Shown in pieces: positions 1-37,741 of a stretch of DNA of 64,000 nt; position 1 is the stretch's first letter; each line of letters opens with the position of its first letter. Location of the stretch: positions 1 through 64,000 of the IMG/VR virus record IMGVR_UViG_3300043446_005562, one strand, 5' to 3'. The notes under the pieces were generated by a model, which had not been told where the DNA came from, did not search any database, and saw nothing but the letters and a program-made list of their open reading frames with translations. The position numbers were made by a program, and so were the translations under genes.

Positions 1-201
1 CCGGTACTCTTTCCAATCGTATACGGTAAAGACCTCTCCGGTTCGGGTCTCGCAGGTCCAGTCGAAATTGACCTTGTCCTCACCCGTATTATCCGAGTAC
101 TGGGGCGCGCCCAGCATTTCAATGAGGTCGTTTACTGAACACACAAAGACGGTATCGTGAAAGGAAGTGCCGCTTGCTGATTTACTTGATAGTGTTGCCA
201 T
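1..201 (-). CDS. conserved phage hypothetical protein, 3' end cut by window edge
   Basis: Hand translation from ATG at 201: MATLSSKSASGTSFHDTVF...DKVNFDWTC...VFTVYDWKEYR. Open to position 1; early promoter at 227-259. Confidence 0.75.
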   Translation of the reverse strand, partial: MATLSSKSASGTSFHDTVFVCSVNDLIEMLGAPQYSDNTGEDKVNFDWTCETRTGEVFTVYDWKEYR

Positions 202-288
202 GGTCTGATTGTTTTAAGGTTATGGAGTAAATATAAGTATTTTATTTGACACGGAAAAATTTTTATGTCAAAAGTTATTAACAATTGG

Positions 289-582
289 CTAGGCCTTGCG
301 AACCTCAACCCTTTCGATTCGGGTTAGGCTGCCGATCGGCGACCACATGGCCTCCTCAAACGAAGAGTATTTTGACCTGTCCCAGAGCCAGACCCGGCCG
401 TCGCGTTTACAGATTTCTCGAGCAGCGCGCTCGGTCAGGCTAGCCTCGGAAAGCCGGCCTTCAAATAGAGCATGCGCATATACTGTCTTAAAGGTTGCGC
501 TTACGCAGACGGGTCTCTCTGTCTCTCCTGCTCGAGAGGTAAGGAGCCAGACCTGTCTGCTTTTTCGGGTTGGACTAGGCAT
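289..582 (-). CDS. hypothetical protein (97 aa)
   Basis: ATG start, same strand as neighbours. Confidence 0.6.
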   Translation of the reverse strand: MPSPTRKSRQVWLLTSRAGETERPVCVSATFKTVYAHALFEGRLSEASLTERAAREICKRDGRVWLWDRSKYSSFEEAMWSPIGSLTRIERVEVRKA

Positions 583-685
583 TTAACTTATCTTTTTTCT
601 GGATTTAACACGCAGTAGATGCAGAAGCCTATACAGATTAGGGATATTATCGCGCACATAGATATAATTGATTACTGGATTTATA

Positions 686-937
686 TTACCCAAGTTCTTC
701 GCTTAACCTCTTAAGGTCCGCGCATTTCTCGTACTGTTCCTTCTTCTCAAAGTGGGAGATCATGGTCCAGATAGCCTGCTTCTTCTCGTCGATTGGGGCA
801 CCGTCGTGTACAACATCCCGGAATTCTCCGGCCAAGGCTTCGTAAAGCCTGTCCATGAATCCGTCGTAGTCGGTCTCTCGAAGCCGGATAAGCTCCAGCA
901 GAATATCATGGTAGTTGCGATTCTTTTTAGTTGACAT
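686..937 (-). CDS. small protein with C-terminal UvrB/UvrC (UVR)-like motif
   Basis: FEKKEQYEKCADLKR resembles the UVR motif. Confidence 0.65.
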   Translation of the reverse strand: MSTKKNRNYHDILLELIRLRETDYDGFMDRLYEALAGEFRDVVHDGAPIDEKKQAIWTMISHFEKKEQYEKCADLKRLSEELG

Positions 938-1004
938 ATCTTTATTTATACTTTTTATTCTGATTCACCCAGCGTGAATGGTATCCTCTTTATAATATAA
1001 TACT

Positions 1005-1037
1005 AAAAAAGGGGTTTCGGATTACCAAGACCCCTTT
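1005..1037 (-). terminator. intrinsic terminator
   Basis: AAAGGGGT/ACCCCTTT stem with T-run on minus strand, after gene 1056-1382. Confidence 0.6.
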
Positions 1038-1055
1038 AATAATGGATTGCATCCG

Positions 1056-1382
1056 CTATATGAATTGGGTTAGGAATCCCGTCGGCCAGCCCGCTTCGTC
1101 CATCTCAAAGTCCATGTCGATCTGAATCATGTCCGAATAGATGCTTATTTTCTGCCACCCATCCATTAGGCGGAAGCAGTTTGAGATCAATTGATCTACC
1201 GATTCGTCGGGTACAAACTCATCGTCCAGCCTGACGGATCCATCGTCCAACGTTTGGATGTCAACGTTTAGGTACTCTCGCATTATGTCTATTGCATCTT
1301 CAGCTTTAAGCTCGGCTAGATAAGCATCGACCTGGCCGAATGCTTCGGAGATTTCAATTCTGAATAATTCTGGATTTCTCAT
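1056..1382 (-). CDS. acidic hypothetical protein (108 aa)
   Basis: ATG start, followed by terminator. Confidence 0.75.
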   Translation of the reverse strand: MRNPELFRIEISEAFGQVDAYLAELKAEDAIDIMREYLNVDIQTLDDGSVRLDDEFVPDESVDQLISNCFRLMDGWQKISIYSDMIQIDMDFEMDEAGWPTGFLTQFI

Positions 1383-1562
1383 CTTTGTCTGGATTTAGGG
1401 TTTATAAAAGAACAGAATACAGGTCAACACGACCGCGATTGCTATTATCAACAGCGCGCCATTGATGAAGGCGTCTCGCTTAAGCGCTTTAACTTCTTTT
1501 TCTGAAAATTTCTTTTGCATAGTGTATAGAGTTAATTATTATTGATTGTACTATTATTTGGA

Positions 1563-1985
1563 TTAAACGTTCTCGACAAAGGCATAGTCTGCCCATGACT
1601 TGGCCCCTGCTGCACGGTAGTTGGCTTGGCTGTATAGATTAGTATTGCTCCAATCTTGATTTATGTCGCCCACCTTCATGGTTAAGAAGAGTTCAGTATC
1701 CATAAGGATTACCTTATTACCCTTACGCGCGAACACCGTCAGCCAGGAATCCGTGCCTTCGGCCTTGAATTGAATTGTTTGCAGAGCTCCCTTCTTGAAT
1801 CCGCGAAATACATCGATCGCGCGTTTCCATTCCGGCCCGCTTTGCCAATTGGCCTGCACGCCAAGATCGTCGACAACTGTCAAGAAGCCGGCCTGCACCT
1901 TAACGATTGCTCTGAACTCTCCTTTGCTAGAGCCGATGAAATCGACCTGATTGATTCCTTCTAAATTAATGATTTGGTTTTTCAT
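1563..1985 (-). CDS. hypothetical protein (140 aa)
   Basis: ATG directly behind early promoter at 2008. Confidence 0.8.
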   Translation of the reverse strand: MKNQIINLEGINQVDFIGSSKGEFRAIVKVQAGFLTVVDDLGVQANWQSGPEWKRAIDVFRGFKKGALQTIQFKAEGTDSWLTVFARKGNKVILMDTELFLTMKVGDINQDWSNTNLYSQANYRAAGAKSWADYAFVENV

Positions 1986-2060
1986 GGTTTGATTGATTTT
2001 GGTTTAAGTAAATATAATACTTTTTCTTGACACGGAAAAATTTATTTTAAAATATTTTCT

Positions 2061-2369
2061 TTAAATCCACTGTGAACCTAGATGGCTGCAGGTCGGGGAA
2101 TACTTCTCGAGCAGGCTGGCTCCAACCTGCAGCAGAAAGCCGGATGGGGTTATGCTCCTGATCGGGCTGTCCTTATCGATTACGACCGAGCCCAGCTGAT
2201 TGCCACGGCTGTCCAGGGTCAGGACGTAGCTGCCGTCTCGAACAAGCAGAAAATCCGAACAGAATCCCTGTAGCTGGGCGCTTGACGCAATTTGAGTCCA
2301 GCCAATTTCCTGACCGGACTCGTCTAGTATTTGGAGGCTAGTACCTCGCTGTATAACATTACCTATCAT
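2061..2369 (-). CDS. hypothetical protein (102 aa)
   Basis: ATGA overlap with upstream ORF. Confidence 0.7.
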   Translation of the reverse strand: MIGNVIQRGTSLQILDESGQEIGWTQIASSAQLQGFCSDFLLVRDGSYVLTLDSRGNQLGSVVIDKDSPIRSITPSGFLLQVGASLLEKYSPTCSHLGSQWI

Positions 2370-2584
2370 GCTCTTGTTTTTGAATTTTTAATACACTCGT
2401 TAAACTCTTCTTCCGACAGGTCTGGCGTATCTTCCGTAACAAGCTTTAGTAGGGTTGCGGCTTCTATCTGTGTTACTAGGGAGTCCCTATCCACCCGGCC
2501 CGCGAATGGATCGCCTTCGGAAAATAGAATCTCAACTGCGGTCTCGGCCCAGAAGCGGGCTTCAAATTGGGTTGTCATTATCAT
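2366..2584 (-). CDS. hypothetical protein (72 aa)
   Basis: ATGA overlaps on both sides, coupled to sigma gene. Confidence 0.7.
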   Translation of the reverse strand: MIMTTQFEARFWAETAVEILFSEGDPFAGRVDRDSLVTQIEAATLLKLVTEDTPDLSEEEFNECIKNSKTRA

Positions 2585-3300
2585 ACGCCTACCTCCTTTC
2601 TCATTTTAGCGCGGGCAACCTTTAGCGCGCGATTAACTTCGACTGGGGTTTTACCAACGGCTTCCGCAACCTCCTTGGTGGAGAGCCCGTCTCCAACGAG
2701 ACCGTAGAACAGCTCCACGATTTGACGTTCGGTTGGTTTAAGAACGTTAAGTACTCTACGGAGTATTCTGGTTTGGTCCTCACTTTCGAATGGGTCTTGG
2801 AAATCTTCTCTCAACAAGAGATCGCCGACCGTATCCTCACCGTCCTCGCCGATTGGGCGGTCCAATTGGATGTTACGCATGTTGATGCTTTCGCCTGCCA
2901 TCTTGCGTTTGTAAAGATCGTATTCCTGATTTACCGGAATTCGAACGGTACGACCGATCTCGCAAAGAGCAAGGTTTAATCTCTTACGTATCCAGAACTG
3001 GGCGTAGGTAATAAACTTCACGTCTTTATCTGGGGTAAAACGACGAGCGGCTTCGATAAGACCCGCATTACCCTCTTGAATTAGGTCATCGATGGAAAGA
3101 CCCATACCGATAAACTTATTCGCAAGCGTAACAACGAATTTTAGATTTGCTTGTACTAATTGCTGTAGCGCGCGATCGTCTCCCTTTTGGATACGTGCTG
3201 CTAATTGAAGCTCCTCAGCTTTGGTGAGAGGAACTGCTACTGATGCAATATCCTTGAAGTATTGCGGTAGGCTTTCTGATGTTTCGAATCTTTTCGACAT
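2581..3300 (-). CDS. RNA polymerase sigma-70 factor, RpoD-like, lacking region 1.1
   Basis: Region 1.2 (SLPQYFKDI), region 2 (LVQANLKFVV, DDLIQEGNAGLIEAARRF, FITYAQFWIR), region 4 HTH (LKPTERQIVELFYGL...STKEVAEAVG). Confidence 0.93.
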   Translation of the reverse strand: MSKRFETSESLPQYFKDIASVAVPLTKAEELQLAARIQKGDDRALQQLVQANLKFVVTLANKFIGMGLSIDDLIQEGNAGLIEAARRFTPDKDVKFITYAQFWIRKRLNLALCEIGRTVRIPVNQEYDLYKRKMAGESINMRNIQLDRPIGEDGEDTVGDLLLREDFQDPFESEDQTRILRRVLNVLKPTERQIVELFYGLVGDGLSTKEVAEAVGKTPVEVNRALKVARAKMRKEVGV

Positions 3301-3392
3301 GGTTGATTTGGTTTAGTTGATTATTATAATGTAAATATAAACAATATTTTTGACAAGTAAAAACTTTTTGTGAATTATTTTCAAAAAAGTTA

Positions 3393-3611
3393 TTAACGTT
3401 TTTTAGACCATTCGGCAATTACTTCACAACCATAAAATCCATGGGAGCCAAAGCCAAAGGAGTCTCCGGGTTTTGGCGAACAAAGCACAACCATTTGATT
3501 CCACCTAGATTTCTTTTCTTCGCTAAAGGATTCCTTTGCTTGGTCAAGATTGTCAAATAGATTGTAAGAGTCTCCATCCTCGGAGCAAGAAATTAAAAGA
3601 TACATTTTCAT
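3393..3611 (-). CDS. hypothetical protein (72 aa)
   Basis: Own early promoter; stop codon lies inside GTTATTAAC box. Confidence 0.7.
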   Translation of the reverse strand: MKMYLLISCSEDGDSYNLFDNLDQAKESFSEEKKSRWNQMVVLCSPKPGDSFGFGSHGFYGCEVIAEWSKKR

Positions 3612-3701
3612 AGTTTATTAGTTTAATTGATTAATATAAGTAAATATAACAATAATACTTGACAGTAAAAAACTTTTTGTGAATTATTTTCAAAAAAGTT
3701 A

Positions 3702-3941
3702 TTAACATACGAACCACTGTCCGCAGTTACGGCACTCAGAAGCATCGTCGACTCTAAAAGCCCTGATTATCCATGACCACTTGTCCGAGTTAGTTGGTTC
3801 CTGTGGGTCCGCATAGACCTCTCTTGCCTCGCAGTGAGGGCAACATAGACCCTGTGGATTTGGTTCTGAACTACCGGTTCTTTCGATTATTAATCGCTTC
3901 ATTTCCGGATTTTTGATTTCTGATAGGTTTGATGTCTGCAT
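3702..3941 (-). CDS. zinc-ribbon protein
   Basis: CPHC...CRNC; own promoter; stop inside box. Confidence 0.75.
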   Translation of the reverse strand: MQTSNLSEIKNPEMKRLIIERTGSSEPNPQGLCCPHCEAREVYADPQEPTNSDKWSWIIRAFRVDDASECRNCGQWFVC

Positions 3942-4002
3942 GATTGATTTGATTGGTTAGTAAGTAAATATAACAATAATTCTTGACACGAAAAAATTTA
4001 TT

Positions 4003-4353
4003 TTACAGAAAATTATTCAATTTGATTTTACGTTTCTCCGTGTACTTCATACGGCCGAAATTCTTGAAACGAAATAGGAAGTCCATTTCACGAAGCACGT
4101 CCCTACCGTAGGTCTTTGAGAGTCTGGTCTCGATAAGTTCAAGCTTCTTATTCCATTTATGAATTGACTGATTACCTTCAAGCATTGCTTTACGTAGAAC
4201 ATCAACACTAAAGCCAGGCCTCTCGCAGTACATCTCCTCTCTCCAGTCAGAGATGTTGTCTGCCATTGCATCAATTTGGCGAGTCAATTGATATACTTCC
4301 TTTACTTGTACATTGCTTGCGTAGAGAGTTGGTATCTTTTTTCTTTTTCCCAT
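4003..4353 (-). CDS. basic hypothetical protein (116 aa)
   Basis: Own early promoter at 4377. Confidence 0.75.
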   Translation of the reverse strand: MGKRKKIPTLYASNVQVKEVYQLTRQIDAMADNISDWREEMYCERPGFSVDVLRKAMLEGNQSIHKWNKKLELIETRLSKTYGRDVLREMDFLFRFKNFGRMKYTEKRKIKLNNFL

Positions 4354-4445
4354 AGTTTTAGTTTTTTTAGGTTTAAGTAAACATAAACAATTACTTTGAC
4401 ACGGAAAAATTTTTGTGAATTATTTTTCAAAAATTATTAACAGCG

Positions 4446-4469
4446 AAAAGGGGTCCTACCACGGACCCC
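4446..4469 (-). terminator. intrinsic terminator
   Basis: GGGGTCC/GGACCCC 7-bp stem plus T-run on minus strand. Confidence 0.7.
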
Positions 4470-4503
4470 AGTTCTATCAATCAACCAAGTAATATTTTAT
4501 TTT

Positions 4504-4785
4504 CTAATTTAGATGGATACCTGTCTCTCGCAACAGGTTCTCTAACTCTATCTCTGAGTCTGACATGCCCTGTTGACGCTTGACCTGCTTCATGCAGAAC
4601 TGCATTAACAGTTGAGTAAGCTCATGTGTGCTGCGCTCGTCCTGGGTTGCGGACAGGAGGGTTATTAATCCATTTCCGATTAGGATGAGCTCGGGGTCAG
4701 AGGTCTTTAATCCGCCCGCGATTAGGCTGTTGGCTAGGGTTTCGAGCTCGGCTCGGGTTTTCTCTCTTATCTCTTTTCTGTTCAT
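4504..4785 (-). CDS. hypothetical protein (93 aa)
   Basis: ATG, helical composition. Confidence 0.75.
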   Translation of the reverse strand: MNRKEIREKTRAELETLANSLIAGGLKTSDPELILIGNGLITLLSATQDERSTHELTQLLMQFCMKQVKRQQGMSDSEIELENLLRETGIHLN

Positions 4786-4814
4786 GATCGATTGGTTATT
4801 GGTTAGGATTTATA

Positions 4815-5009
4815 TTACTCTTTTCCGATCGTGATGGTCTTGTTCATTGCATAGATTCTTTCCCAGAACTCGTTGTAACCAAGCTCCTGCTCTGGATTAA
4901 CCGTGCTCTGGGCTCTCGCGCCGCCGCCATAGGTTAAGTCAATGGGTTCTCCGATTGATGGATCGAAACCTTGTAGTCTGTCGATTAGGGATTTAAAGAT
5001 TTTCTTCAT
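4815..5009 (-). CDS. hypothetical protein (64 aa)
   Basis: ATG with A-rich leader. Confidence 0.65.
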   Translation of the reverse strand: MKKIFKSLIDRLQGFDPSIGEPIDLTYGGGARAQSTVNPEQELGYNEFWERIYAMNKTITIGKE

Positions 5010-5103
5010 GGTCTATTTGGATTTAATTGGTTACTTGATTAGATGCCAGCCGGGCCCTGTGCTTGGGCCTGGTCCTGGACTTGATGGGCTGTTTGGGTCT
5101 GCT

Positions 5104-5316
5104 TCATTTGGCTTTAGGAATTAAACGAATTAGCGATTGAGTTAATAGACCCGGATCTTCGTCGTACCGGCCGCGAGACCAGCCGTCTACCAGACTCTTT
5201 AGGTCTTTGGAATTCTTGGTTGAGATGCCGGATTCCTCGGCGGACTTGATCGTCTCGGCCGGAATATCCATCCACGTTTTCATTTCTCGGAGCATTGATG
5301 CTAGGGTTGTTGTCAT
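5104..5316 (-). CDS. hypothetical protein (70 aa)
   Basis: Own early promoter at 5339. Confidence 0.7.
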   Translation of the reverse strand: MTTTLASMLREMKTWMDIPAETIKSAEESGISTKNSKDLKSLVDGWSRGRYDEDPGLLTQSLIRLIPKAK

Positions 5317-5369
5317 AGTTTTTGGTTTGATTGATTAGTTAAATATAAGCATTTTAATTGACACGGGAA

Positions 5370-5933
5370 AATAAAGTTATTAACAGTTACTAGGGAGTCC
5401 GGCTAGACCCTTCGCCGCCAAGAACTGGATGCGCTCGATCCGGGCCTGCAATTCCGGCAGGTCCTGTGCCATGCTGTGCAGTATCTTTAGATCGCGTTTG
5501 CTCATGCTTGGCGCGGCCATGGCCAGCGCAACGTCAACTGGATTACCAAGCCGCATGGCCTCGAGAACAGGAGCAGAGCCGGCTGGGGAGATTGATCCTG
5601 GAATCTGGCAGTTTGCGCCGAATTCAAAGCGCCAAAAGCCGGGTCTGTTCCAGCTGTCGATGAGGTTGGCGTCCAGCATCTGACGTACTCGGCTTATGTG
5701 CTTGCTTGTCGTACGGCTGTACTTGCCATTTGTCACGAGCCGCGGTCTGCGGCCGAGCTCCTTTGCAAAGAACTCTACTGTTGCAACATGGGTTTCGTAG
5801 CTTATAACCCTGTCCCCGACTAGGAACAGGTTCTGCGCGATCTTTAGGGTTGGTTTGAGTTTCATGGTTTAAATATAATATTTTTTGTTGAGACCTGACA
5901 ATAAAGTTATTAACAGTTACTAGGGAGTCCGGC
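5370..5933. repeat. perfect 34-bp direct repeat (5370-5403, 5900-5933) flanking one gene-plus-promoter cassette
   Basis: AATAAAGTTATTAACAGTTACTAGGGAGTCCGGC read at both positions. Confidence 0.95.
5380..5865 (-). CDS. hypothetical protein (161 aa)
   Basis: ISYETHVA...YSRTTSKHI motif common in phage early proteins; C-terminus encoded by the direct repeat. Confidence 0.75.
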   Translation of the reverse strand: MKLKPTLKIAQNLFLVGDRVISYETHVATVEFFAKELGRRPRLVTNGKYSRTTSKHISRVRQMLDANLIDSWNRPGFWRFEFGANCQIPGSISPAGSAPVLEAMRLGNPVDVALAMAAPSMSKRDLKILHSMAQDLPELQARIERIQFLAAKGLAGLPSNC

Positions 5934-5938
5934 CGAAT

Positions 5939-6460
5939 CTATACAGATTCAACCGGTGCGAATACTTCATTGACATTAAAATCTCCTGAACGGCTGCTGT
6001 TGAGCATGCGCTCCAGGCAGACAGGCCCGAGAGCGGTGTGGATCGATTCCGGATGGGTAAGCGGTAATCCGCAAGCGCAGCATCTGCCCTCGTGGAATAG
6101 ACCTACACGACCGCGTAGAATCTCTGGATTCTTGATCGCTGACACGACCCAGCCTAGGGCGCGAGCTAAGCGTGAATCCGGTCTGACATTGCGGCCGAGC
6201 TTGACGTGCATTGTCTCGGCAAAGAGAGTGCCGGCGAACTGCGAGCTTTGTCGGCCGTCGTTAAGCAGGGAAATATCAACGTAATAGATCGGCAGCTTGA
6301 TCTTGCGATCCTGCTTGTCGCGCAGCTGCTTGATCTTCACGGTCATGTGGGTGCCTGCCGCAAGGTTACGGAACGTAAGCACCGCACGGCCGGCTAACGC
6401 GAGCTTGGGTAGGGCAAGCGGGTTAAGGTTCGGGCGGGGAATGTTTCTGTGGTTTCTCAT
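5939..6460 (-). CDS. DUF6011-like zinc-binding protein (173 aa)
   Basis: HEGRCCACGLPLTHPESIHTALGPVC; start moved to ATG at 6460 behind promoter 6484. Confidence 0.7.
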   Translation of the reverse strand: MRNHRNIPRPNLNPLALPKLALAGRAVLTFRNLAAGTHMTVKIKQLRDKQDRKIKLPIYYVDISLLNDGRQSSQFAGTLFAETMHVKLGRNVRPDSRLARALGWVVSAIKNPEILRGRVGLFHEGRCCACGLPLTHPESIHTALGPVCLERMLNSSRSGDFNVNEVFAPVESV

Positions 6461-6666
6461 GGTAGATTGGTTTAATTGATTAAGTAAATATAACCAATTA
6501 CTTTCAAATAAAAAAATTTTTTGTGAATTATTTTTCAAAAGTTATTAACAAAGTTATGGACACTGGCGGACTGAAGTGCAGGTCGGAGTATACCCTCTGC
6601 GATCCGGTTGGGGATCGAACCTTAAAAACCGGGCGCTGGGCCCGGTCCTATGGATTATCCGGCTCG

Positions 6667-6810
6667 TTAGAACTCGAAGGCTGAGGTTGAGGAGTAGTTG
6701 CCGGTTACAAGGTTCGCGATTGCGAACAGGATTCCTGATACTGCGATTGCTGCGACGCATACGGTCCAGACTTGCATTACGCGTAGGGCGATGATTTGTG
6801 GTTTGCTCAT
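6667..6810 (-). CDS. small membrane protein (47 aa, not in ORF track)
   Basis: MSKPQIIALRVMQVWTVCVAAIAVSGILFAIANLVTGNYSSTSAFEF; own promoter at 6840. Confidence 0.65.
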   Translation of the reverse strand: MSKPQIIALRVMQVWTVCVAAIAVSGILFAIANLVTGNYSSTSAFEF

Positions 6811-6883
6811 GGTAGATTTGATTGATTGGTTAAACATAGGTAAATATAATAATTATCTTTGAGACCTGAAAACTTTTTGTGAA

Positions 6884-7054
6884 TTATTTTCCAAAAGTTA
6901 TTAACATTTTTGCGGACATGCTGAAGAGCGCGGCGAAGGTAAATGCCAGAATCGGCAAGGTTTCTAGAGGTTGGGGAGTTACGACTAGGGCGATAAGACC
7001 CGCAGCGCTCGCAAAGAACACTGTTGCTAGGGCAAGGATTTCTAGTTTTTTCAT
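6884..7054 (-). CDS. small two-helix membrane protein (56 aa, not in ORF track)
   Basis: MKKLEILALATVFFASAAGLIALVVTPQPLETLPILAFTFAALFSMSAKMLITFGK; own promoter at 7078. Confidence 0.65.
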   Translation of the reverse strand: MKKLEILALATVFFASAAGLIALVVTPQPLETLPILAFTFAALFSMSAKMLITFGK

Positions 7055-7138
7055 GGTGTATAAATTAATTGGTTAAAGCTAATATAACCAAAAAACCCCA
7101 GACTAAAAAATCTGGGGTCATTTATTTTTCAAAAGTTA

Positions 7139-7429
7139 TTAACATTTCTGGCCGCAGTCCCGGCAACGCCAAAGCGTGAGACCGCTTTCGTGACGAACGG
7201 CCGCGTACTGATTCTTGTGCTGACACTCCGCTTCCTGCTCCGCATAGAGCTTTAAGCAGGCCGGACAGCCGATCGTCTCGAGACCGGAGAGCCTGGCCCA
7301 GTTGTTGCTTAGAGCTGGCGTGCCGCACAGGATTCCGTGTCCGCTTTTGTAGATGTGGGCTGTGTTACTCCACACGTTGCCCTTGTTGCCGAAGATGGAG
7401 AAGTTGGGTTTAAGGTCTTTTACTTGCAT
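7139..7429 (-). CDS. Cys/His-rich zinc-finger protein
   Basis: H..CG, CPAC, C.H, CRDC; own promoter; stop inside box. Confidence 0.75.
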   Translation of the reverse strand: MQVKDLKPNFSIFGNKGNVWSNTAHIYKSGHGILCGTPALSNNWARLSGLETIGCPACLKLYAEQEAECQHKNQYAAVRHESGLTLWRCRDCGQKC

Positions 7430-7511
7430 ATCGATCTTTTAATTGGTTAAGTAAATATAACAAAAAAACCCCAAACAAAAAAATCTGGGGTCATTTTCTT
7501 TTAAACTTTTT

Positions 7512-7598
7512 CTAGAGGCAATGCATAAGCAAGCCGTAAAGGCCAATGCCTGCCAAAAAGTAGATCAGGTTATTCAACCACTTTGGATATCTGTCCAT
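7512..7598 (-). CDS. possible 28-aa membrane peptide
   Basis: MDRYPKWLNNLIYFLAGIGLYGLLMHCL after an A-rich leader. Confidence 0.4.
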   Translation of the reverse strand: MDRYPKWLNNLIYFLAGIGLYGLLMHCL

Positions 7599-7626
7599 GC
7601 TTCTCGTGTTAGGTGTTAATAATGTC

Positions 7627-32289: not shown

Positions 32290-33093
32290 TTATCGCTGAA
32301 CTTCAGGTACCCAATGCGTGGTCCGACCGTCCAATGTCTCTTCACGAATAACGGTATTTCCCTTGGAATCAAGCGGTTGAGCATACACTTCAAACTCAAA
32401 TACAAACTCTCCAAGGCCTCCGCCGACTCTTTGATAATTGCGAATGCTCGCTCCGCCCTGGTCGTATGAGGTCTGCATGATCTTTTTGATCCAGCCAAAG
32501 AGCACAGTCGACTCAACCGGGTCAATGTCCTTAACTAGCCGGTGGGGTGAAATTCCAGATCGATAGAGCACTTCGCACTTGATGTAATTGCCTATGCCTG
32601 CGCACACTCTCTGATCCATCAGCACCTCTGTAATGGTTTTGTTTGGGTACTTATTGATTCTCTGATTAAATTCAATAGGGGTGAAATCTGCATCATTCAG
32701 AGGATCTCGACCAAGGCTCTTAATCTTCTTATCGAGCTCAGCCCGGTCATGAGAAAATTTAATGGTGCCGAACCTACGCTGATCCACAAAATACAGGGCC
32801 CTGGAGTTCTCGATACCTATTCCAAAATGAGAATGCGTACCGCTTTCTTCTGACCAGTATCCGCTCATGCCCAAAGTTATCCACATGGTTGCACCAGTTT
32901 CAAACTCAAGCCACATGAACTTGCCACGAACTCCACCGTCTATTACCCGGCTCGGCAAAATCACCTGGTCCAGCCCAATTGGGCGCTTCTTGAGAAACCT
33001 GCCGCTAAATACCTGTAATTGGGTTACTCTGGATTCGCCGATCTCTTTTCTAAGATCCTCGTACACACGTCTGACTTCCGGTCCTTCTGGCAT
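32290..33093 (-). CDS. nei: Fpg/Nei DNA glycosylase/AP lyase, zincless-finger type
   Basis: N-terminal PEGPEV, RGKFMW, LGMSG, DQRRFG, H2TH GIGNY; no four-Cys finger; GRTTHW. Confidence 0.9.
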   Translation of the reverse strand: MPEGPEVRRVYEDLRKEIGESRVTQLQVFSGRFLKKRPIGLDQVILPSRVIDGGVRGKFMWLEFETGATMWITLGMSGYWSEESGTHSHFGIGIENSRALYFVDQRRFGTIKFSHDRAELDKKIKSLGRDPLNDADFTPIEFNQRINKYPNKTITEVLMDQRVCAGIGNYIKCEVLYRSGISPHRLVKDIDPVESTVLFGWIKKIMQTSYDQGGASIRNYQRVGGGLGEFVFEFEVYAQPLDSKGNTVIREETLDGRTTHWVPEVQR

Positions 33094-33589: not shown

Positions 33590-34069
33590 ATGTTTAAATA
33601 TCTTTCCAATATACTATCAACAATAACGCCGGGGCAGCGCTTGATTGCGCTGTGCGTGCTCCTGCTCTCAATCGTAATCATTACGCTTGGCCCAAATTTA
33701 ATTGATGCAACGACTAAAGATACTGAAGAACTAACAACAAAAATTAATTTGCAAAGAGTTGAGATCAAGGACCTCTCCGACCAGATTAAAAAGTTGAATG
33801 ATCAACTGGTTTCAAACGAGAGCGAGTGCACCAATCGCTTGATTGACAAAGAGCGCCGAATTTTGACCGTGATAGACGAACTAGAAAGGGATCTTGCGCC
33901 GAAGCCAACCGTTAGACATCAGGCGAACTATCGTATGATTCAGGATTCAACTATGGCCATGATGATGCCTCCTCCACCAGAGCAGGCACAGCCCCAAGAT
34001 AATTCTAGGGCAATCAAGAAGTTGAAAAACCTCAAGCTTGATTTGATTAAAGACGTAAAGAAGCCTTAA
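33590..34069 (+). CDS. membrane-anchored coiled-coil protein, possible spanin-like
   Basis: N-terminal TM helix followed by long coiled coil. Confidence 0.65.
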   Translation: MFKYLSNILSTITPGQRLIALCVLLLSIVIITLGPNLIDATTKDTEELTTKINLQRVEIKDLSDQIKKLNDQLVSNESECTNRLIDKERRILTVIDELERDLAPKPTVRHQANYRMIQDSTMAMMMPPPPEQAQPQDNSRAIKKLKNLKLDLIKDVKKP

Positions 34070-34118: not shown

Positions 34119-34316
34119 ATGTATTATTTAGCAAAATTACGCTTTGAGTCAGAGGACGACAACGGCAAAACCAAAAAGATTAGAGAACAGTACTTGGTAC
34201 AGGCATCTTCGGTAGGAGAAGCTGAGCAAAAGCTAATGGATCGATTTGGTCAAGGCATTTCGCCTTGCCAGTTAGAAGCAGTTCAAGAATCAAAAATCTT
34301 AGGCCTTATTGACTAA
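34119..34316 (+). CDS. DUF4494-like protein (Bacteroidota-type)
   Basis: YYLAKLRFE...GKTKKIREQYLVQASSVGEAE. Confidence 0.75.
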   Translation: MYYLAKLRFESEDDNGKTKKIREQYLVQASSVGEAEQKLMDRFGQGISPCQLEAVQESKILGLID

Positions 34317-34331
34317 AAGTTGACCGAGACT

Positions 34332-34364
34332 AAAAAAGAAAAGGAGCTTAGCGCTCCTTTTTTT
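34332..34364. terminator. bidirectional terminator
   Basis: AAAAGGAGC/GCTCCTTTT between convergent genes. Confidence 0.75.
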
Positions 34365-34584
34365 ATGTGAAATAGATTGGAAATTTCTCGACTAGACTCT
34401 TGAGTATAATTGAATCCTTTTCGCCTTTACTGAACATATCGTGTGCGTGTTCAAACATTTGAATGCTGGTTTCGTTACCTATGATTGCATCAATTTTTCG
34501 ATTGACAACTGCTGATGCACCGTTTTTTAATATCGATTGGGCCAGATCAGTTGGTTCAGGAATATAGTACTTGTTGAAACTCAT
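34363..34584 (-). CDS. hypothetical protein (73 aa)
   Basis: MSFNKYYIPE; AGTATAAT upstream. Confidence 0.75.
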   Translation of the reverse strand: MSFNKYYIPEPTDLAQSILKNGASAVVNRKIDAIIGNETSIQMFEHAHDMFSKGEKDSIILKSLVEKFPIYFT

Positions 34585-34607
34585 AATAATATTATACTTT
34601 ACTAAAC

Positions 34608-34639
34608 AAAAAAAGGTTAGCTTTTTAGGGCTAACCTTT
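34608..34639 (-). terminator. intrinsic terminator closing the putative ncRNA
   Basis: AAAGGTTAGC/GCTAACCTTT 10-bp stem plus T-run on minus strand. Confidence 0.8.
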
Positions 34640-35020
34640 GGTATCGTGGGGAAAACGTATGGAAGGATTAGGGTTCACCTTCAATTTGATGCTAAGCTTG
34701 CGTGTTTAAGCGACAACCTTCATACCCTCCTGTCAGAGGCGACTCAAAGCAAGTTGGATCCGCTTGAATCACTATCGTGTTTACCACAACAGTATGAGTG
34801 CTTTATCCCACCTAGCGAAGGATTATTCAGCCATTTAACGGGATTCTTGTATACCCGTATGCCGATCGCAAAATACCATTATATGTATATCAAAACCATA
34901 GATTCCAGTGGTTAGCTGGTTCAAGTTGACCGTTTGGTCTGCCGTTTACAGTCGGCCCTTGCGGAGCATCCTCCTAATCTACACCATTACCTGTTTTGCA
35001 AGCAGGTTGTTCTGGCACAT
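34640..35020 (-). ncRNA. candidate large structured non-coding RNA (~380 nt), family unknown
   Basis: No credible ORF; at least 10 hairpins and long-range helices seen by eye; ends at a strong terminator. Confidence 0.55.
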
Positions 35021-35022
35021 AC

Positions 35023-35301
35023 TCAGCTGAAGCTCATGACTTCTTCAACTGTTTCCCCTCGTAATTTTAAAGAACTTATGTTACTATTATACCAATACAA
35101 TTGAGAAGGTTTTGGTACAAATCCACTTTTTTTCAAAAATTTTTCAAATGAATCGTAAGGATAGTTTACTGTTGTAGAGCTGTCAACCTTTGCAATCTTG
35201 ATATAGGTTGACATTAACGGCGTCAAAAAAAATCCAGCAACCCTGTGCTCGATTCCGTCTTTTATTAAAATAAGTTCTTCTAATTGTACAGAATCTTGCA
35301 T
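35023..35301 (-). CDS. hypothetical protein (92 aa)
   Basis: ATG, tight packing. Confidence 0.7.
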   Translation of the reverse strand: MQDSVQLEELILIKDGIEHRVAGFFLTPLMSTYIKIAKVDSSTTVNYPYDSFEKFLKKSGFVPKPSQLYWYNSNISSLKLRGETVEEVMSFS

Positions 35302-35878: not shown

Positions 35879-36853
35879 TTAAACTAGAGTATTTTCAAAA
35901 GCTCTTTTATCATCAAATTCCAGGTAGTTTTCAAGTAGACTATTGGAATTTTGACGATACTTAAGTACAGCTAGATCCTTGGCCTTTGCCTCGACCTCGA
36001 TGTCAAAAGTGAGTCCATAAGTATTTATTTGCTCATAGACATAATCGGCATGGGACCTAGCAATAACACTTGGATCCTCGAAAGTTTTTCGACAGCTTGA
36101 GTAATGAGTGAGAGGAGTTCGACCGTGCCAAGTGGTTGAGGCAAGGCGCAGAGCAGCCTCCTCGGTAAGATCGCCGGTATTGAAGCGATGATGATGAAAG
36201 TCAAAGGTAATGGGTGTACCGATTTTAAGATAGACCATTGAATAGAGATCGGCCACCGAGTACTGGGCAGCCTTGTCATCGTTTTCGACAACTAGCCTGG
36301 CACGTGTACTGTGCTTAAGCAGATTGAAATTTTCGCAGAACCTGGCCGCAGCAGCTTCCTTGTCGCCATAGGATCCACCTAGATGAATATTGATTGGAAA
36401 TTGATAGTCAATCGGCAAGCCCATTAGGGTCATGATTTCTGCATGCTGATCAAGATCCTTGACTGTTTTGCGAACAACCGCTGGATTTGGAGAACACAAA
36501 ACATCGAACTGGCCCGGGTGCATTGAGATACGCATGTTGTGTTTTAGCACAAACTCGCCAATCGCCTGCATGTCCTGTAAAATAAAGTCAAAGTTGGGCA
36601 GCTCGGTGATTTCGTATTCGGACATCCACGGAAAAATATCGCTGGACATGCGATACACCATAATGTTGTTTGCAAGATTCCACTCAAGTATCTTGAGAAT
36701 GTCACGTACGTTTTGATGGGCAAGCTCGCCGCAGTAGGCTGGGCCCTTTTCTTGAAAGGTACGCTTGATCATACCACGATTGGCAGTGATGCGTTGGTCG
36801 GCTAGAGACAGATTAATACAGCAATAGCCAAGTCTGACGTTAGAATTTTGCAT
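35879..36853 (-). CDS. uvsE: UV-damage endonuclease (UvsE/UvdE)
   Basis: RLGYCCIN, RMSSDIFP, SMHPGQF, LVVENDD, FDFHHH, HAD, EAKAKD; start at ATG 36853. Confidence 0.95.
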   Translation of the reverse strand: MQNSNVRLGYCCINLSLADQRITANRGMIKRTFQEKGPAYCGELAHQNVRDILKILEWNLANNIMVYRMSSDIFPWMSEYEITELPNFDFILQDMQAIGEFVLKHNMRISMHPGQFDVLCSPNPAVVRKTVKDLDQHAEIMTLMGLPIDYQFPINIHLGGSYGDKEAAAARFCENFNLLKHSTRARLVVENDDKAAQYSVADLYSMVYLKIGTPITFDFHHHRFNTGDLTEEAALRLASTTWHGRTPLTHYSSCRKTFEDPSVIARSHADYVYEQINTYGLTFDIEVEAKAKDLAVLKYRQNSNSLLENYLEFDDKRAFENTLV

Positions 36854-36866
36854 AGGTTTAATATAC

Positions 36867-36891
36867 AAAAAAGAGGACGCTAAGGTCCTCT
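36867..36891 (-). terminator. intrinsic terminator
   Basis: AGAGGAC/GTCCTCT stem plus T-run on minus strand. Confidence 0.65.
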
Positions 36892-37111: not shown

Positions 37112-37741
37112 TCAAAAGGTTATTTTTGTGTAATCAACGGTTACTGATCTCATTACTCTAATCACGTCAATTGCGTCCTGTAGAGCATCGTGAGTTACCT
37201 CACCTTCGACTCCAGCGCGTTTCATGCACTCGGCTAAATTAGGCAAGCCCTTATCGTTGGCCCAATCCATACACAGAATTGCTGGATCAATCATGCGCTG
37301 TCTGATTTGAATAGACGACGACCAGCCGGTTAGCTTCTGTAAGAACAGCTTGTCAAAGGTTGCAAAGTTTTTACCAGCAACGGTGATTCTAACTTGGCCA
37401 GTTTTTGACTCTGGGTCTCCCAAGCCGTGGGCCTGTAACCACATGCCCAAAGACTTTGCGACAAGACCCTCGGGCAAAATATTGTACTTTTTGCGAAGCT
37501 CAGCGCGTTCTTCTTTATTGGCGCGCTCCAACTCGCCAAGCTGAGCAAGAATATCCTTGTTCATGACTAGCGCAAATGGACTGCCTGTGTACTGTGGGTG
37601 TTCAACAAGGCATTTGAATCTAGGCAGATCATTAATCGGCACAAGATTTTCAGTATCCTCAATGACTGCCCCAATCTGAATGGTTTGGCAGGTTTCCGGA
37701 TCTAGCCCAGTTGTTTCAATGTCTATTGATACGTATTTCAT
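37112..37741 (-). CDS. DEDDh 3'-5' exonuclease
   Basis: IDIETTGLD, GKNFATFD, MID, HDALQDA. Confidence 0.92.
   Translation of the reverse strand: MKYVSIDIETTGLDPETCQTIQIGAVIEDTENLVPINDLPRFKCLVEHPQYTGSPFALVMNKDILAQLGELERANKEERAELRKKYNILPEGLVAKSLGMWLQAHGLGDPESKTGQVRITVAGKNFATFDKLFLQKLTGWSSSIQIRQRMIDPAILCMDWANDKGLPNLAECMKRAGVEGEVTHDALQDAIDVIRVMRSVTVDYTKITF

What the first reader, a model, noticed from the sequence alone, without database searches (positions are those of the whole stretch)
34640..35020. Unannotated ~380-nt densely structured RNA candidate
Seen (plus coordinates, minus-strand RNA): helix 34899-34904/34976-34981 encloses four hairpins (34905-19, 34928-39, 34941-56 and a GCAA-capped one). 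Further stems lie at 34989-35007, 34838-58, 34771-93 (9 bp with three G-U pairs), 34742-46/34795-99, 34726-39 and 34657-66/34717-25. A 10-bp terminator follows immediately. Gaps elsewhere are mostly under 100 bp. It lacks the hallmark motifs of tmRNA, RNase P and group II introns. Inference: a stand-alone large ncRNA, possibly of a new class.
Basis: partly seen in the sequence, partly recalled or inferred. Interest (0 to 1): 0.7.

Follow-up and report, generated by a model that had tools for sequence, protein, structure and literature searches.

The report
Double manA-type phage RNA, highly expressed
The region encodes a real, very abundant RNA of about 411 nucleotides from a large freshwater phage, built from two interlocked copies of the known "manA" RNA fold, which was recently reported to self-assemble into RNA cages, so it is a new double-sized variant of a known RNA kind and not a new class.

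Summary
The finding is real. On the minus strand, 34648-35060 encodes a discrete RNA of about 411 nt. In seven freshwater or riverine metatranscriptomes it is covered about 100 to 1000 times more deeply than its flanking genes. Adapter-flanked contig ends fall at 34648/34650 and 35054-35060. Ten distinct homologues from related large phages support a 126-pair structure. Of these pairs, 98.5% of cells are canonical and 49 show compensatory changes, against 3-10 in slid controls.

It is not a new class. Rfam manA (RF01745) matches twice, at 50.5 and 44-45 bits (E 2e-12 and 5e-10). Both scores are under the 55.2-bit cut-off.

The two copies are not independent tandem domains. Covariation shows long-range helices that interlock them. 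An outer manA core is complete, and a circularly permuted inner core is inserted through its P8 stem. A 10-bp helix joining the 5' and 3' ends closes the whole RNA.

The RNA has its own terminator. In four of ten relatives no same-strand gene follows it, so a riboswitch role is unlikely.

A 2026 preprint reports that manA RNAs self-assemble into RNA cages. I therefore infer an architectural, self-assembling phage RNA. I judge it a new variant of a known kind.

The parts
34648..35060 (-). Mature, abundant RNA of about 411 nt (5' end about 35054-35060, 3' end 34648-34650)
   Evidence: Metatranscriptome contigs: X5 34650-35060, X3 and X7 34650-35047, X12 34653-35039, X19 34648-35054. Illumina adapter sequence abuts both ends in X19 and the 34650 end in X7. 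Depth is 100-7600 against 0-12 on the flanks. The DNA-like run X1 is flat at 2-4.5.
35052..35061 (-). H0, 5' strand of the terminal closing helix (CG.AGGGGAAA); pairs with 34645-34654
   Evidence: RNAalifold on A3 and A4; 99% canonical with 4 compensatory pairs.
34645..34654 (-). H0, 3' strand (UUUCCCC.ACG); the mature 3' end lies at its edge
35024..35051 (-). P1 hairpin. The 9-bp stem covaries at 7 pairs. The 10-nt loop contains the palindrome UCAUGA in all ten homologues.
35018..35022 (-). H1 (manA P2), 5' strand GUAUG; pairs with CAUAC 34657-34661 across the whole molecule
   Evidence: 100% canonical, with UA:5 and CG:5 at one pair. The local alternative GUAUG/UAAAU is only 80% canonical.
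34983..35016 (-). Outer core P3 hairpin (GCCAGAACAA ... GUAAUGG) with the loop palindrome UUGCAA
   Evidence: Aligned to manA model positions 30-66; covariation; loop.
34898..34982 (-). Outer core P4 junction. It encloses hairpins 34963-74, 34941-56 (variable), 34928-39 and 34905-19. The last carries the conserved loop CUAACCA.
   Evidence: 6 of 7 closing pairs are compensatory, and the hairpins have 2-3 compensatory pairs each. ACCA loop.
34889..34894 (-). H2 (outer P8), 5' strand UUUGAU; pairs with AUCAAA 34685-34690
   Evidence: 100% canonical with 2 compensatory pairs.
34865..34888 (-). Variable hairpin 34873-88, then the linker UUUGCGAU. The linker is complementary to 34691-34710 (candidate helix H2b).
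   Evidence: Per-sequence folds and duplex search give 5-7 bp in all ten. The register differs between subgroups, so this part is tentative.
34860..34864 (-). H3 (inner P8), 5' strand CGGCA; pairs with UGUCG 34711-34715 and closes the inner core
   Evidence: 100% canonical; one pair is AU:5, GC:4, UA:1.
34838..34858 (-). Inner core P9-type hairpin (stem ACGGG/CCCGU, loop UAUACAAGAAU). Both Rfam hits share it. It is invariant.
   Evidence: The loop resembles the canonical manA P9 loop UAYACAGGAAU.
34800..34831 (-). Inner core P3 hairpin with the exact manA signature GCUGAAUAAU ... AUAAAGC
34718..34798 (-). Inner core P4 junction. It encloses hairpins 34773-91 (invariant GUGGU), 34740-71 and 34726-39.
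   Evidence: 6 of 7 closing pairs are compensatory. GUGGU loop.
34662..34682 (-). Outer core P9 hairpin (stem GAAGG/CCUUC, loop UGAACCCUAAU)
   Evidence: Aligned to manA model positions 166-182; one-sided changes only.
34605..34647 (-). 3' trailer with the conserved ACGAUAYYAA, then an intrinsic terminator (stem 34639-34612 and a U tract). Absent from the accumulated RNA.
   Evidence: Terminator scan. The stem covaries and sits at a fixed distance in all ten homologues. It has no RNA-seq coverage.
35062..35091 (-). Upstream conserved box GUUCUUUAA (35067-35075) and TATAAT (35086-35091). This is a promoter or a removed leader; unresolved.
   Evidence: The GTTCTT box is conserved in all ten. A TATAAT-like hexamer is seen in win, L008, L004 and L091. 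The sigma-70 scan did not call it.

Best explanation
SHOWN. The minus strand of 34648-35060 produces a discrete, very abundant, non-coding RNA of about 411 nt. It is encoded by a roughly 253-kb phage with a T4-type capsid protein, from fresh water.

The RNA is made of two manA-type (RF01745) cores that are interlocked, not simply tandem:
- A terminal helix (H0) joins the 5' and 3' ends.
- After a P1 hairpin, helix H1 (= manA P2) closes an outer five-way junction. This junction carries P3, the P4 three-hairpin sub-junction, P8 and P9 in the canonical order.
- The outer P8 (H2) does not end in a loop. It runs on, through H3, into a second junction.
- The second junction carries P9', P3' and P4' in the same cyclic order. 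It is a circularly permuted manA core that lacks P2.

The gene has its own intrinsic terminator. The accumulated RNA ends 8 nt before the terminator stem, at the edge of H0, so the trailer is removed.

INFERRED. The RNA acts in trans as an architectural RNA and does not regulate a neighbouring gene. Single-core manA RNAs are reported to self-assemble in vitro into pentamer-based decamers and a 60-mer cage through loop-loop contacts. I therefore propose that this double-core RNA is a covalently fused two-core protomer of a similar RNA-only assembly.

Three features are candidate contact surfaces:
- The outer core keeps only the ACCA loop and the inner core keeps only the GUGGU loop. Canonical manA has both in each unit. 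The two loops are complementary over 4-7 bp in all ten homologues.
- The P1 loop carries the palindrome UCAUGA in all ten.
- The P3 loop carries UUGCAA in five sequences and UUGUAA (self-pairing with G-U) in the other five.

What the assembly does during infection is unknown.
For: Transcript:
- Depth on the RNA is 100-7600 against 0-12 on the flanks in seven metatranscriptomes.
- Contig ends are reproducible, and adapters abut 34648/34650 and 35054.
- The DNA-like run is flat.

Structure:
- 126 consensus pairs, 98.5% canonical, 49 compensatory, against 3-10 in slid controls.
- The opposite strand folds far worse.

Interlocking:
- H0, H1, H2 and H3 are 99-100% canonical, with 4, 1, 2 and 1 compensatory pairs.
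- The local alternatives are 74-100% canonical, with 0-1 compensatory pairs.

Homology to manA:
- Two full-length RF01745 matches occur in the window and in every relative.
- One match is over the cut-off.

Not cis-regulatory:
- In L089, L096, L095 and L097 the RNA and its terminator are followed directly by a convergent gene.
- The 73-aa gene occurs without the RNA in L005, L006 and L007.
- No contig links the RNA to the downstream gene.

Assembly precedent: bioRxiv 10.64898/2026.07.01.735769.

Loop complementarity. Canonical manA units carry both loops.
Against: - No direct evidence of multimerisation exists for this RNA. The cage result for manA is an in-vitro preprint on RNAs under 200 nt.
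- My mapping of the preprint's L5 and L7 onto the GUGGUG and ACCA loops is inferred from the consensus. I did not read it from their figures.
- The GUG of the GUGGU segment can also pair locally with an invariant CAC.
- The loop complementarities are short and mostly invariant, so covariation cannot confirm them.
- Logan contigs carry no strand information and are a poor measure of exact ends.
- The alignment has only ten distinct sequences from one phage lineage. The shuffle-free controls I could run do not correct for phylogeny.
Confidence: 0.55

Rival explanations
1. It is a stand-alone manA-type RNA that works as a monomer. It might bind and sequester a host or phage protein or a small molecule, or act as a ribozyme, with no higher-order self-assembly. 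The double core would simply give two binding sites.
For: All the evidence for a discrete, abundant, structured, trans-acting RNA applies equally. Many invariant single-stranded segments (GCAAG, the P1 loop, the P9 loops, ACGAUA) could be ligand or protein sites. Weinberg et al. rated manA a riboswitch candidate because of its complexity.
Against: The family's only experimental characterisation shows self-assembly. The two self-complementary loops and the reciprocal ACCA/GUGGU loop retention are what an RNA-RNA interface would look like.
Confidence: 0.3
2. It is a tandem riboswitch. Two manA aptamers would sense a metabolite and control the downstream 73-aa gene (34363-34584) through the terminator at 34612-34639.
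For: Rfam classes manA as cis-regulatory, and the original paper rated it a riboswitch candidate. In the window and in five relatives the order is RNA, terminator, 73-aa gene on the same strand.
Against: - Four relatives have the RNA and terminator but no same-strand downstream gene.
- Three contigs have the 73-aa gene without the RNA.
- The terminator is separated from the last structured element by a conserved spacer. The 5'-3' closing helix H0 leaves no obvious alternative pairing.
- The RNA accumulates 100 to 1000 times above the downstream gene, as a species trimmed of its terminator.
- The two 'aptamers' are interlocked, not independent.
Confidence: 0.1
3. It is not a functional RNA: chance structure in an intergenic spacer, a degraded gene, or a coding region.
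For: The single-sequence z-score is only -2.29. A mechanical 114-aa ORF lies on the plus strand.
Against: There are 49 compensatory pairs. No ORF is conserved in length or frame among homologues, and the indels are of 1, 2 and 14 nt. Expression is extreme. The CM matches have E values down to 2e-15.
Confidence: 0.02

Closest known systems
manA RNA motif (Rfam RF01745; Weinberg et al. 2010, PMC2864571)
   Same: Both halves align to the whole 192-position model at E 1e-9 to 1e-15. They share the same helices (P3 with the GAAUAA/UAA signature, the P4 three-hairpin junction, the P9 GGUA...AAUCC hairpin, the ACCA and GUGGU loops) in the same cyclic order around the junction. Both are carried by phages with a T4-type capsid protein.
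   Different: - Scores are 35-57 bits, against 160-197 bits for 20 canonical marine examples.
- There are two cores in one 411-nt molecule, where canonical manA has one core of about 190 nt.
- P2 and P8 are formed between the repeats.
- The inner core is circularly permuted and lacks P1 and P2.
- An extra terminal helix H0 is present, and the P1 loop is larger and invariant.
- Each core keeps only one of the ACCA/GUGGU loops.
- The source is freshwater large phages without psbA, not marine cyanophages or gamma-proteobacteria.
- It is not in a 5' UTR.
manA RNA cages and decamers (bioRxiv 10.64898/2026.07.01.735769)
   Same: Same RNA family. The loop-loop complementarities in the window RNA involve loops of the same kind that I infer form the reported L5-L7' and L3-L8' kissing contacts.
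   Different: Those are single-core RNAs under 200 nt, assembled in vitro. Nothing is known about assembly of a fused double core, whose P8 loops no longer exist.
GOLLD and ROOL large phage-associated RNAs
   Same: All are large, elaborately structured, abundant, phage-encoded RNAs of unknown biological role. From my own knowledge, GOLLD and ROOL form RNA-only multimeric cages.
   Different: There is no sequence or structure match: Rfam scans returned only manA. This RNA is smaller than those. The window RNA is not next to tRNA genes, although canonical manA often is.
Tandem riboswitches (for example the glycine riboswitch; own knowledge)
   Same: Two homologous structured domains lie in one transcript and are followed by a terminator.
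   Different: The domains here exchange strands. The downstream gene is dispensable. The RNA accumulates as a trimmed, stable species.

Membership tests
manA RNA (RF01745) | Covariance-model score at or above the curated gathering score (55.2 bits) | tested here: not met
   The window scores 50.5 bits (34828-35050) and 44.1-44.9 bits (34654-34859). Among relatives, only the 5' core of G010 passes, at 56.9 bits.
manA RNA (RF01745) | Statistically significant full-length match to the model (homology) | tested here: met
   E values are 2.3e-12 and 4.7e-10, over model positions 1-192, in the window. The same pair of matches occurs in all 11 related records searched.
manA RNA (RF01745) | Conserved helices P3, P4 with three hairpins, P8 and P9 around a junction closed by P2, supported by covariation | tested here: met
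   All are present, with compensatory changes. However, P2 and P8 are formed between the two repeats, and the inner core lacks P2.
manA RNA (RF01745) | Each unit carries both the GUGGUG (P5) loop and the ACCA (P7) loop | tested here: not met
   All 19 distinct canonical sequences have both loops. Here the outer core has only ACCA and the inner core has only GUGGU.
manA RNA (RF01745) | Single domain of about 190 nt | tested here: not met
   The transcript is 411 nt with two cores. Twenty canonical loci each hold one copy of 187-201 nt.
manA RNA (RF01745) | Position in a 5' UTR (Rfam type Cis-reg) | tested here: not met
   Four relatives have no same-strand downstream gene. The RNA has its own terminator and accumulates separately. 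Several canonical manA copies abut tRNA genes, so this feature is doubtful for the family itself.
manA RNA (RF01745) | Self-assembly into pentamer-based closed oligomers | not testable with these tools
   Reported for five manA RNAs in vitro. Testing needs SEC or cryo-EM of this RNA.
Tandem riboswitch with a terminator expression platform | Always upstream of a regulated gene; the terminator competes with the aptamer; the aptamers fold independently | tested here: not met
   RNA-seq.
Other large structured RNAs in Rfam 15 (RNase P, tmRNA, 6S, group I/II introns, GOLLD, ROOL, HEARO, OLE and others) | A match to the family's covariance model | tested here: not met
   There was no hit at gathering thresholds in the whole window. 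At E<=10 on 34500-35150, only manA plus chance-level hits appeared. ARAGORN found no tRNA or tmRNA.

The most novel reading that the evidence does not exclude
The RNA is a natural, covalently fused two-core protomer of an RNA-only shell. It would be the RNA counterpart of a double-jelly-roll capsid protein. A tandem duplication of the manA cage subunit, followed by strand exchange, would have turned former inter-subunit contacts (P8 and the ACCA/GUGGU kissing loops) into intramolecular or directional ones. That would give a cage or lattice of new geometry, which a large phage makes in very large amounts during infection to enclose or organise something.
Probability: 0.25. Interest if true: 0.85.

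Novelty: new variant of a known kind. Interest (0 to 1): 0.66.

Why it matters
manA has been an orphan 'riboswitch candidate' since 2010. Only in 2026 was it reported to form RNA cages in vitro, and its biology remains unknown.

This locus adds four points:
1. A manA-type RNA is a stand-alone, processed and extremely abundant transcript in natural communities. This argues that the family is a class of structural RNA genes and not a class of 5' UTR regulators.
2. The family extends beyond marine cyanophages, into large freshwater phages that lack psbA.
3. A double-core, strand-exchanged architecture exists. It shows how an RNA assembly subunit can evolve by duplication and domain swapping, and it is an obvious cryo-EM target.
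4. There is a set of ten covarying homologues and defined RNA ends from which constructs can be designed.

Tried and rejected
- Rfam at gathering thresholds over the whole window gave nothing. The manA relation appeared only with E-value thresholds.
- blastn of the region against 50,697 GenBank phage records found no match.
- I first read the locus as two independent tandem manA domains, and as a tandem riboswitch for the 73-aa gene. I rejected this after the covariation results, the gene-context results and the RNA-seq results.
- I first argued that the RNA (92% nt identity to L008) is far better conserved than its neighbours (48-53% aa identity). I withdrew this because the DUF4494 neighbour is 97% identical. 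The flanks evolve at very different rates.
- Pfam, PHROGs and PDB sequence searches of the flanking 73-aa and 92-aa proteins gave nothing useful. DUF4494 gave no functional lead.
- The motif AGAGTATAAT before the 73-aa gene is not enriched in the window.
- Sixteen-mer scans of viral contigs were mostly chance hits.
- The metagenome and genome scans added only L097, L104 and L106. The Holophagaceae MAG contig is 2.4 kb and is not credible host evidence.
- One paper search was swamped by unrelated 'management' hits.
- I did not run the count of structure pairs or build a covariance model. The alignment exceeds 400 columns, and I avoided typing a 538-character structure string. I computed equivalent counts in Python instead.

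Full report
**Observation**

The interval 34585-35022 lies between two minus-strand ORFs, of 73 aa (34363-34584) and 92 aa (35023-35301). As RNA, the minus strand folds better than shuffles (z -2.29). The plus strand does not (z -0.57). An intrinsic terminator sits at 34639-34612 on the minus strand, with 10 pairs and a T run. No tRNA or tmRNA is present. No Rfam family reaches its gathering score anywhere in the window.

**Identity**

With E-value thresholds, Rfam manA (RF01745) matches the minus strand twice, each time over the whole 192-position model:
- 34828-35050: 50.5 bits, E 2.3e-12.
- 34654-34859: 44.1-44.9 bits, E 4.7e-10.

Both are below the 55.2-bit cut-off. They overlap in the hairpin 34838-34858.

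manA is a candidate structured RNA from marine metagenomes, T4-like cyanophages and two gamma-proteobacteria. It was rated a possible riboswitch (PMC2864571).

**Relatives**

Protein-anchored and DNA-pattern searches found homologues of the whole element on about a dozen IMG/VR and JGI contigs, and on one 2.4-kb MAG contig. They give ten distinct sequences at 70-94% identity to the window. Every related record searched shows the same pair of overlapping manA matches. The 5' core of one of them passes the cut-off at 56.9 bits.

Twenty canonical manA loci from marine viral contigs score 160-197 bits. Each holds a single copy, and several sit next to tRNA genes. One abuts a tRNA gene directly. 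The window element is therefore a distant, double-sized relative.

**Structure**

RNAalifold on nine and on ten sequences gives 123-126 pairs. In the ten-sequence alignment:
- 98.5% of pair cells are canonical.
- 49 pairs have changes on both sides.
- Sliding the 3' partners by 1-3 columns gives 39-46% canonical cells and 3-10 such pairs.
- The opposite strand gives -63.9 kcal/mol, against -119.6 kcal/mol.

The fold is not two independent domains. Four long-range helices tie the halves together:

| Helix | Coordinates | Canonical | Compensatory pairs |
|---|---|---|---|
| H0 | 35052-61 with 34645-54 | 99% | 4 |
| H1 | GUAUG 35018-22 with CAUAC 34657-61 | 100% | 1 (UA:5, CG:5) |
| H2 | UUUGAU 34889-94 with AUCAAA 34685-90 | 100% | 2 |
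| H3 | CGGCA 34860-64 with UGUCG 34711-15 | 100% | 1 (AU:5, GC:4, UA:1) |

The local pairings that a simple tandem model needs are 74-100% canonical, with 0-1 compensatory pairs.

Read against the manA consensus:
- H1 corresponds to P2. It closes an outer junction that carries P3, P4, P8 (= H2) and P9 in the canonical order.
- P8 does not end in a loop. It continues into H3.
- H3 closes an inner junction that carries a P9-type hairpin, P3' and P4' in the same cyclic order.

The inner unit is therefore a circularly permuted core without P1 or P2, joined to the outer core through a continuous P8 stem. This reading is inference from covariation. It has not been tested by probing.

Two (34742-46/34795-99 and 34657-66/34717-25) are displaced by covarying alternatives. 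The 'GCAA cap' is a single-stranded junction segment.

**Expression**

Twenty-four RNA-type runs hold about 0.3-0.6 of the sampled words of a 1.1-kb stretch around the locus. I laid the contigs of eight runs on the window:
- In seven metatranscriptomes the interval 34648-35060 has word depths of about 37 to 7600. The flanking genes have 0-12.
- Contigs end reproducibly: 34650-35060 (411 nt), 34650-35047 (twice), 34653-35039 and 34648-35054.
- Illumina adapter sequence abuts 34648, 34650 and 35054. Many cDNA molecules therefore ended there.
- A DNA-like library is flat at 2-4.5 across the region.
- Nothing covers the terminator hairpin.

So the accumulated RNA is trimmed back to the edge of H0. 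Logan contigs carry no strand and smooth local depth, so the ends are good to a few nucleotides at best.

**Context**

- In the window and in five relatives the order is RNA, terminator, then the 73-aa gene.
- In L089, L096, L095 and L097 the RNA has its own terminator and is followed directly by a convergent DUF4494 gene and its terminator.
- Three contigs carry the 73-aa gene with no manA-like RNA.
- The only constant neighbour is the convergent DUF4494 gene.
- No reading frame is conserved across the element. It has indels of 1, 2 and 14 nt, and the mechanical ORFs differ between homologues.

These facts, together with the expression data, argue against a 5' UTR regulator.

**The phage**

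The record is a 252.6-kb IMG/VR virus, estimated 93% complete, with 41% G+C.
- It encodes a T4-type Gp23 capsid protein. The nearest database relatives of that protein are uncultured huge phages and Lak phages, at 31-37% identity.
- It has no psbA.
- Its 19 tRNA genes lie at 211-229 kb, far from the RNA.
- The runs that hold the RNA are riverine, freshwater and aquatic.
- The host is unknown.

**Mechanism**

A 2026 preprint (bioRxiv 10.64898/2026.07.01.735769) reports that manA RNAs under 200 nt self-assemble in vitro. They form pentamer-based decamers, octamers and a 60-subunit icosahedral-like cage. The assemblies are held by intermolecular kissing loops (L5-L7', L8-L9', L3-L8') and a GNRA-receptor contact.

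In the 19 distinct canonical sequences I collected, every unit has both a GUGGUG loop on P5 and an ACCA loop on P7. These two loops are mutually complementary. I infer that they are the L5-L7' pair.

In the double RNA:
- The outer core keeps only the ACCA loop (CUAACCA, 34909-15).
- The inner core keeps only the GUGGU segment (34781-85).
- The two are complementary over 4 bp in five sequences and over 6-7 bp in the other five.
- The P1 loop holds the palindrome UCAUGA in all ten.
- The P3 loop holds UUGCAA or UUGUAA. Two further copies of this motif lie in the P8 connector.

These are the kinds of surface that would mediate RNA-RNA contacts, but none is verified.

My best explanation is a trans-acting, self-assembling architectural RNA in which two former subunits are fused. 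I hold the 'stand-alone manA-type ncRNA with an interlocked double core' part with high confidence. I hold the self-assembly part with modest confidence.

**Novelty**

Rfam 15 has no model that reaches threshold here. GenBank phages have no blastn match. The papers I could search describe only single-core manA. I classify the element as a new variant of a known kind.

Noticed in passing
L161:1120-1384; L115:3525-3834; L135:5685-5991; L123:2401-2959: Canonical marine manA RNAs (160-197 bits) lie beside tRNA genes. In L161 the tRNA ends at 1191 and manA starts at 1192. This suggests that canonical manA is also a stable RNA gene co-processed with tRNAs, and not a 5' UTR element.
   Followed up: partly
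window 34119-34316 (+) and homologues in all ten loci: A 65-aa DUF4494 (PF14902) gene, convergent with the RNA, is its only constant neighbour. It is 97% identical in L008 and 58% in L091. Atlas clusters of it are almost all viral. I found no functional lead.
   Followed up: partly
window 35023-35060 (-): The last ~38 nt of the 92-aa ORF (35023-35301) overlap the 5' end of the RNA (H0 and P1). In L008 the homologous ORF stops earlier, at 71 aa. The C-terminal extension in the window may therefore be an accident of reading into the RNA gene.
   Followed up: partly
window 32290-33093 (-), 35879-36868 (-), 37112-37741 (-): A cluster of DNA-repair-type genes surrounds the locus: an Fpg/Nei-type glycosylase, a UvdE UV endonuclease (best relative in a 642-kb uncultured phage, 52% identity) and an RNase T-like exonuclease.
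   Followed up: partly
window 34879: In several metatranscriptomes part or all of the RNA population reads G in place of T at 34879, and one contig has an inserted G at 34878. Both lie in the variable hairpin 34873-88. These look like strain variants.
   Followed up: no
window 33590-34069 (+): A 159-aa ORF with an N-terminal membrane segment and a coiled-coil-like middle gives a weak PHROG match to an Rz-like spanin (E 1.4e-4).
   Followed up: no
window 35067-35075 (-) and homologous positions: The box GUUCUUUAA, just upstream of the mature 5' end, is conserved in all ten homologues although it is absent from the accumulated RNA. It could be a promoter element or a processing signal.
   Followed up: partly
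L106 (CAWULW010000156.1, 2395 bp): A copy 94% identical to the window RNA lies on a 2.4-kb contig binned into an uncultured Holophagaceae MAG. This is probably a mis-binned phage fragment and is not reliable host evidence.
   Followed up: partly
G000:C1:211168-228787: The phage carries 19 tRNA genes in a cluster far outside the window.
   Followed up: no
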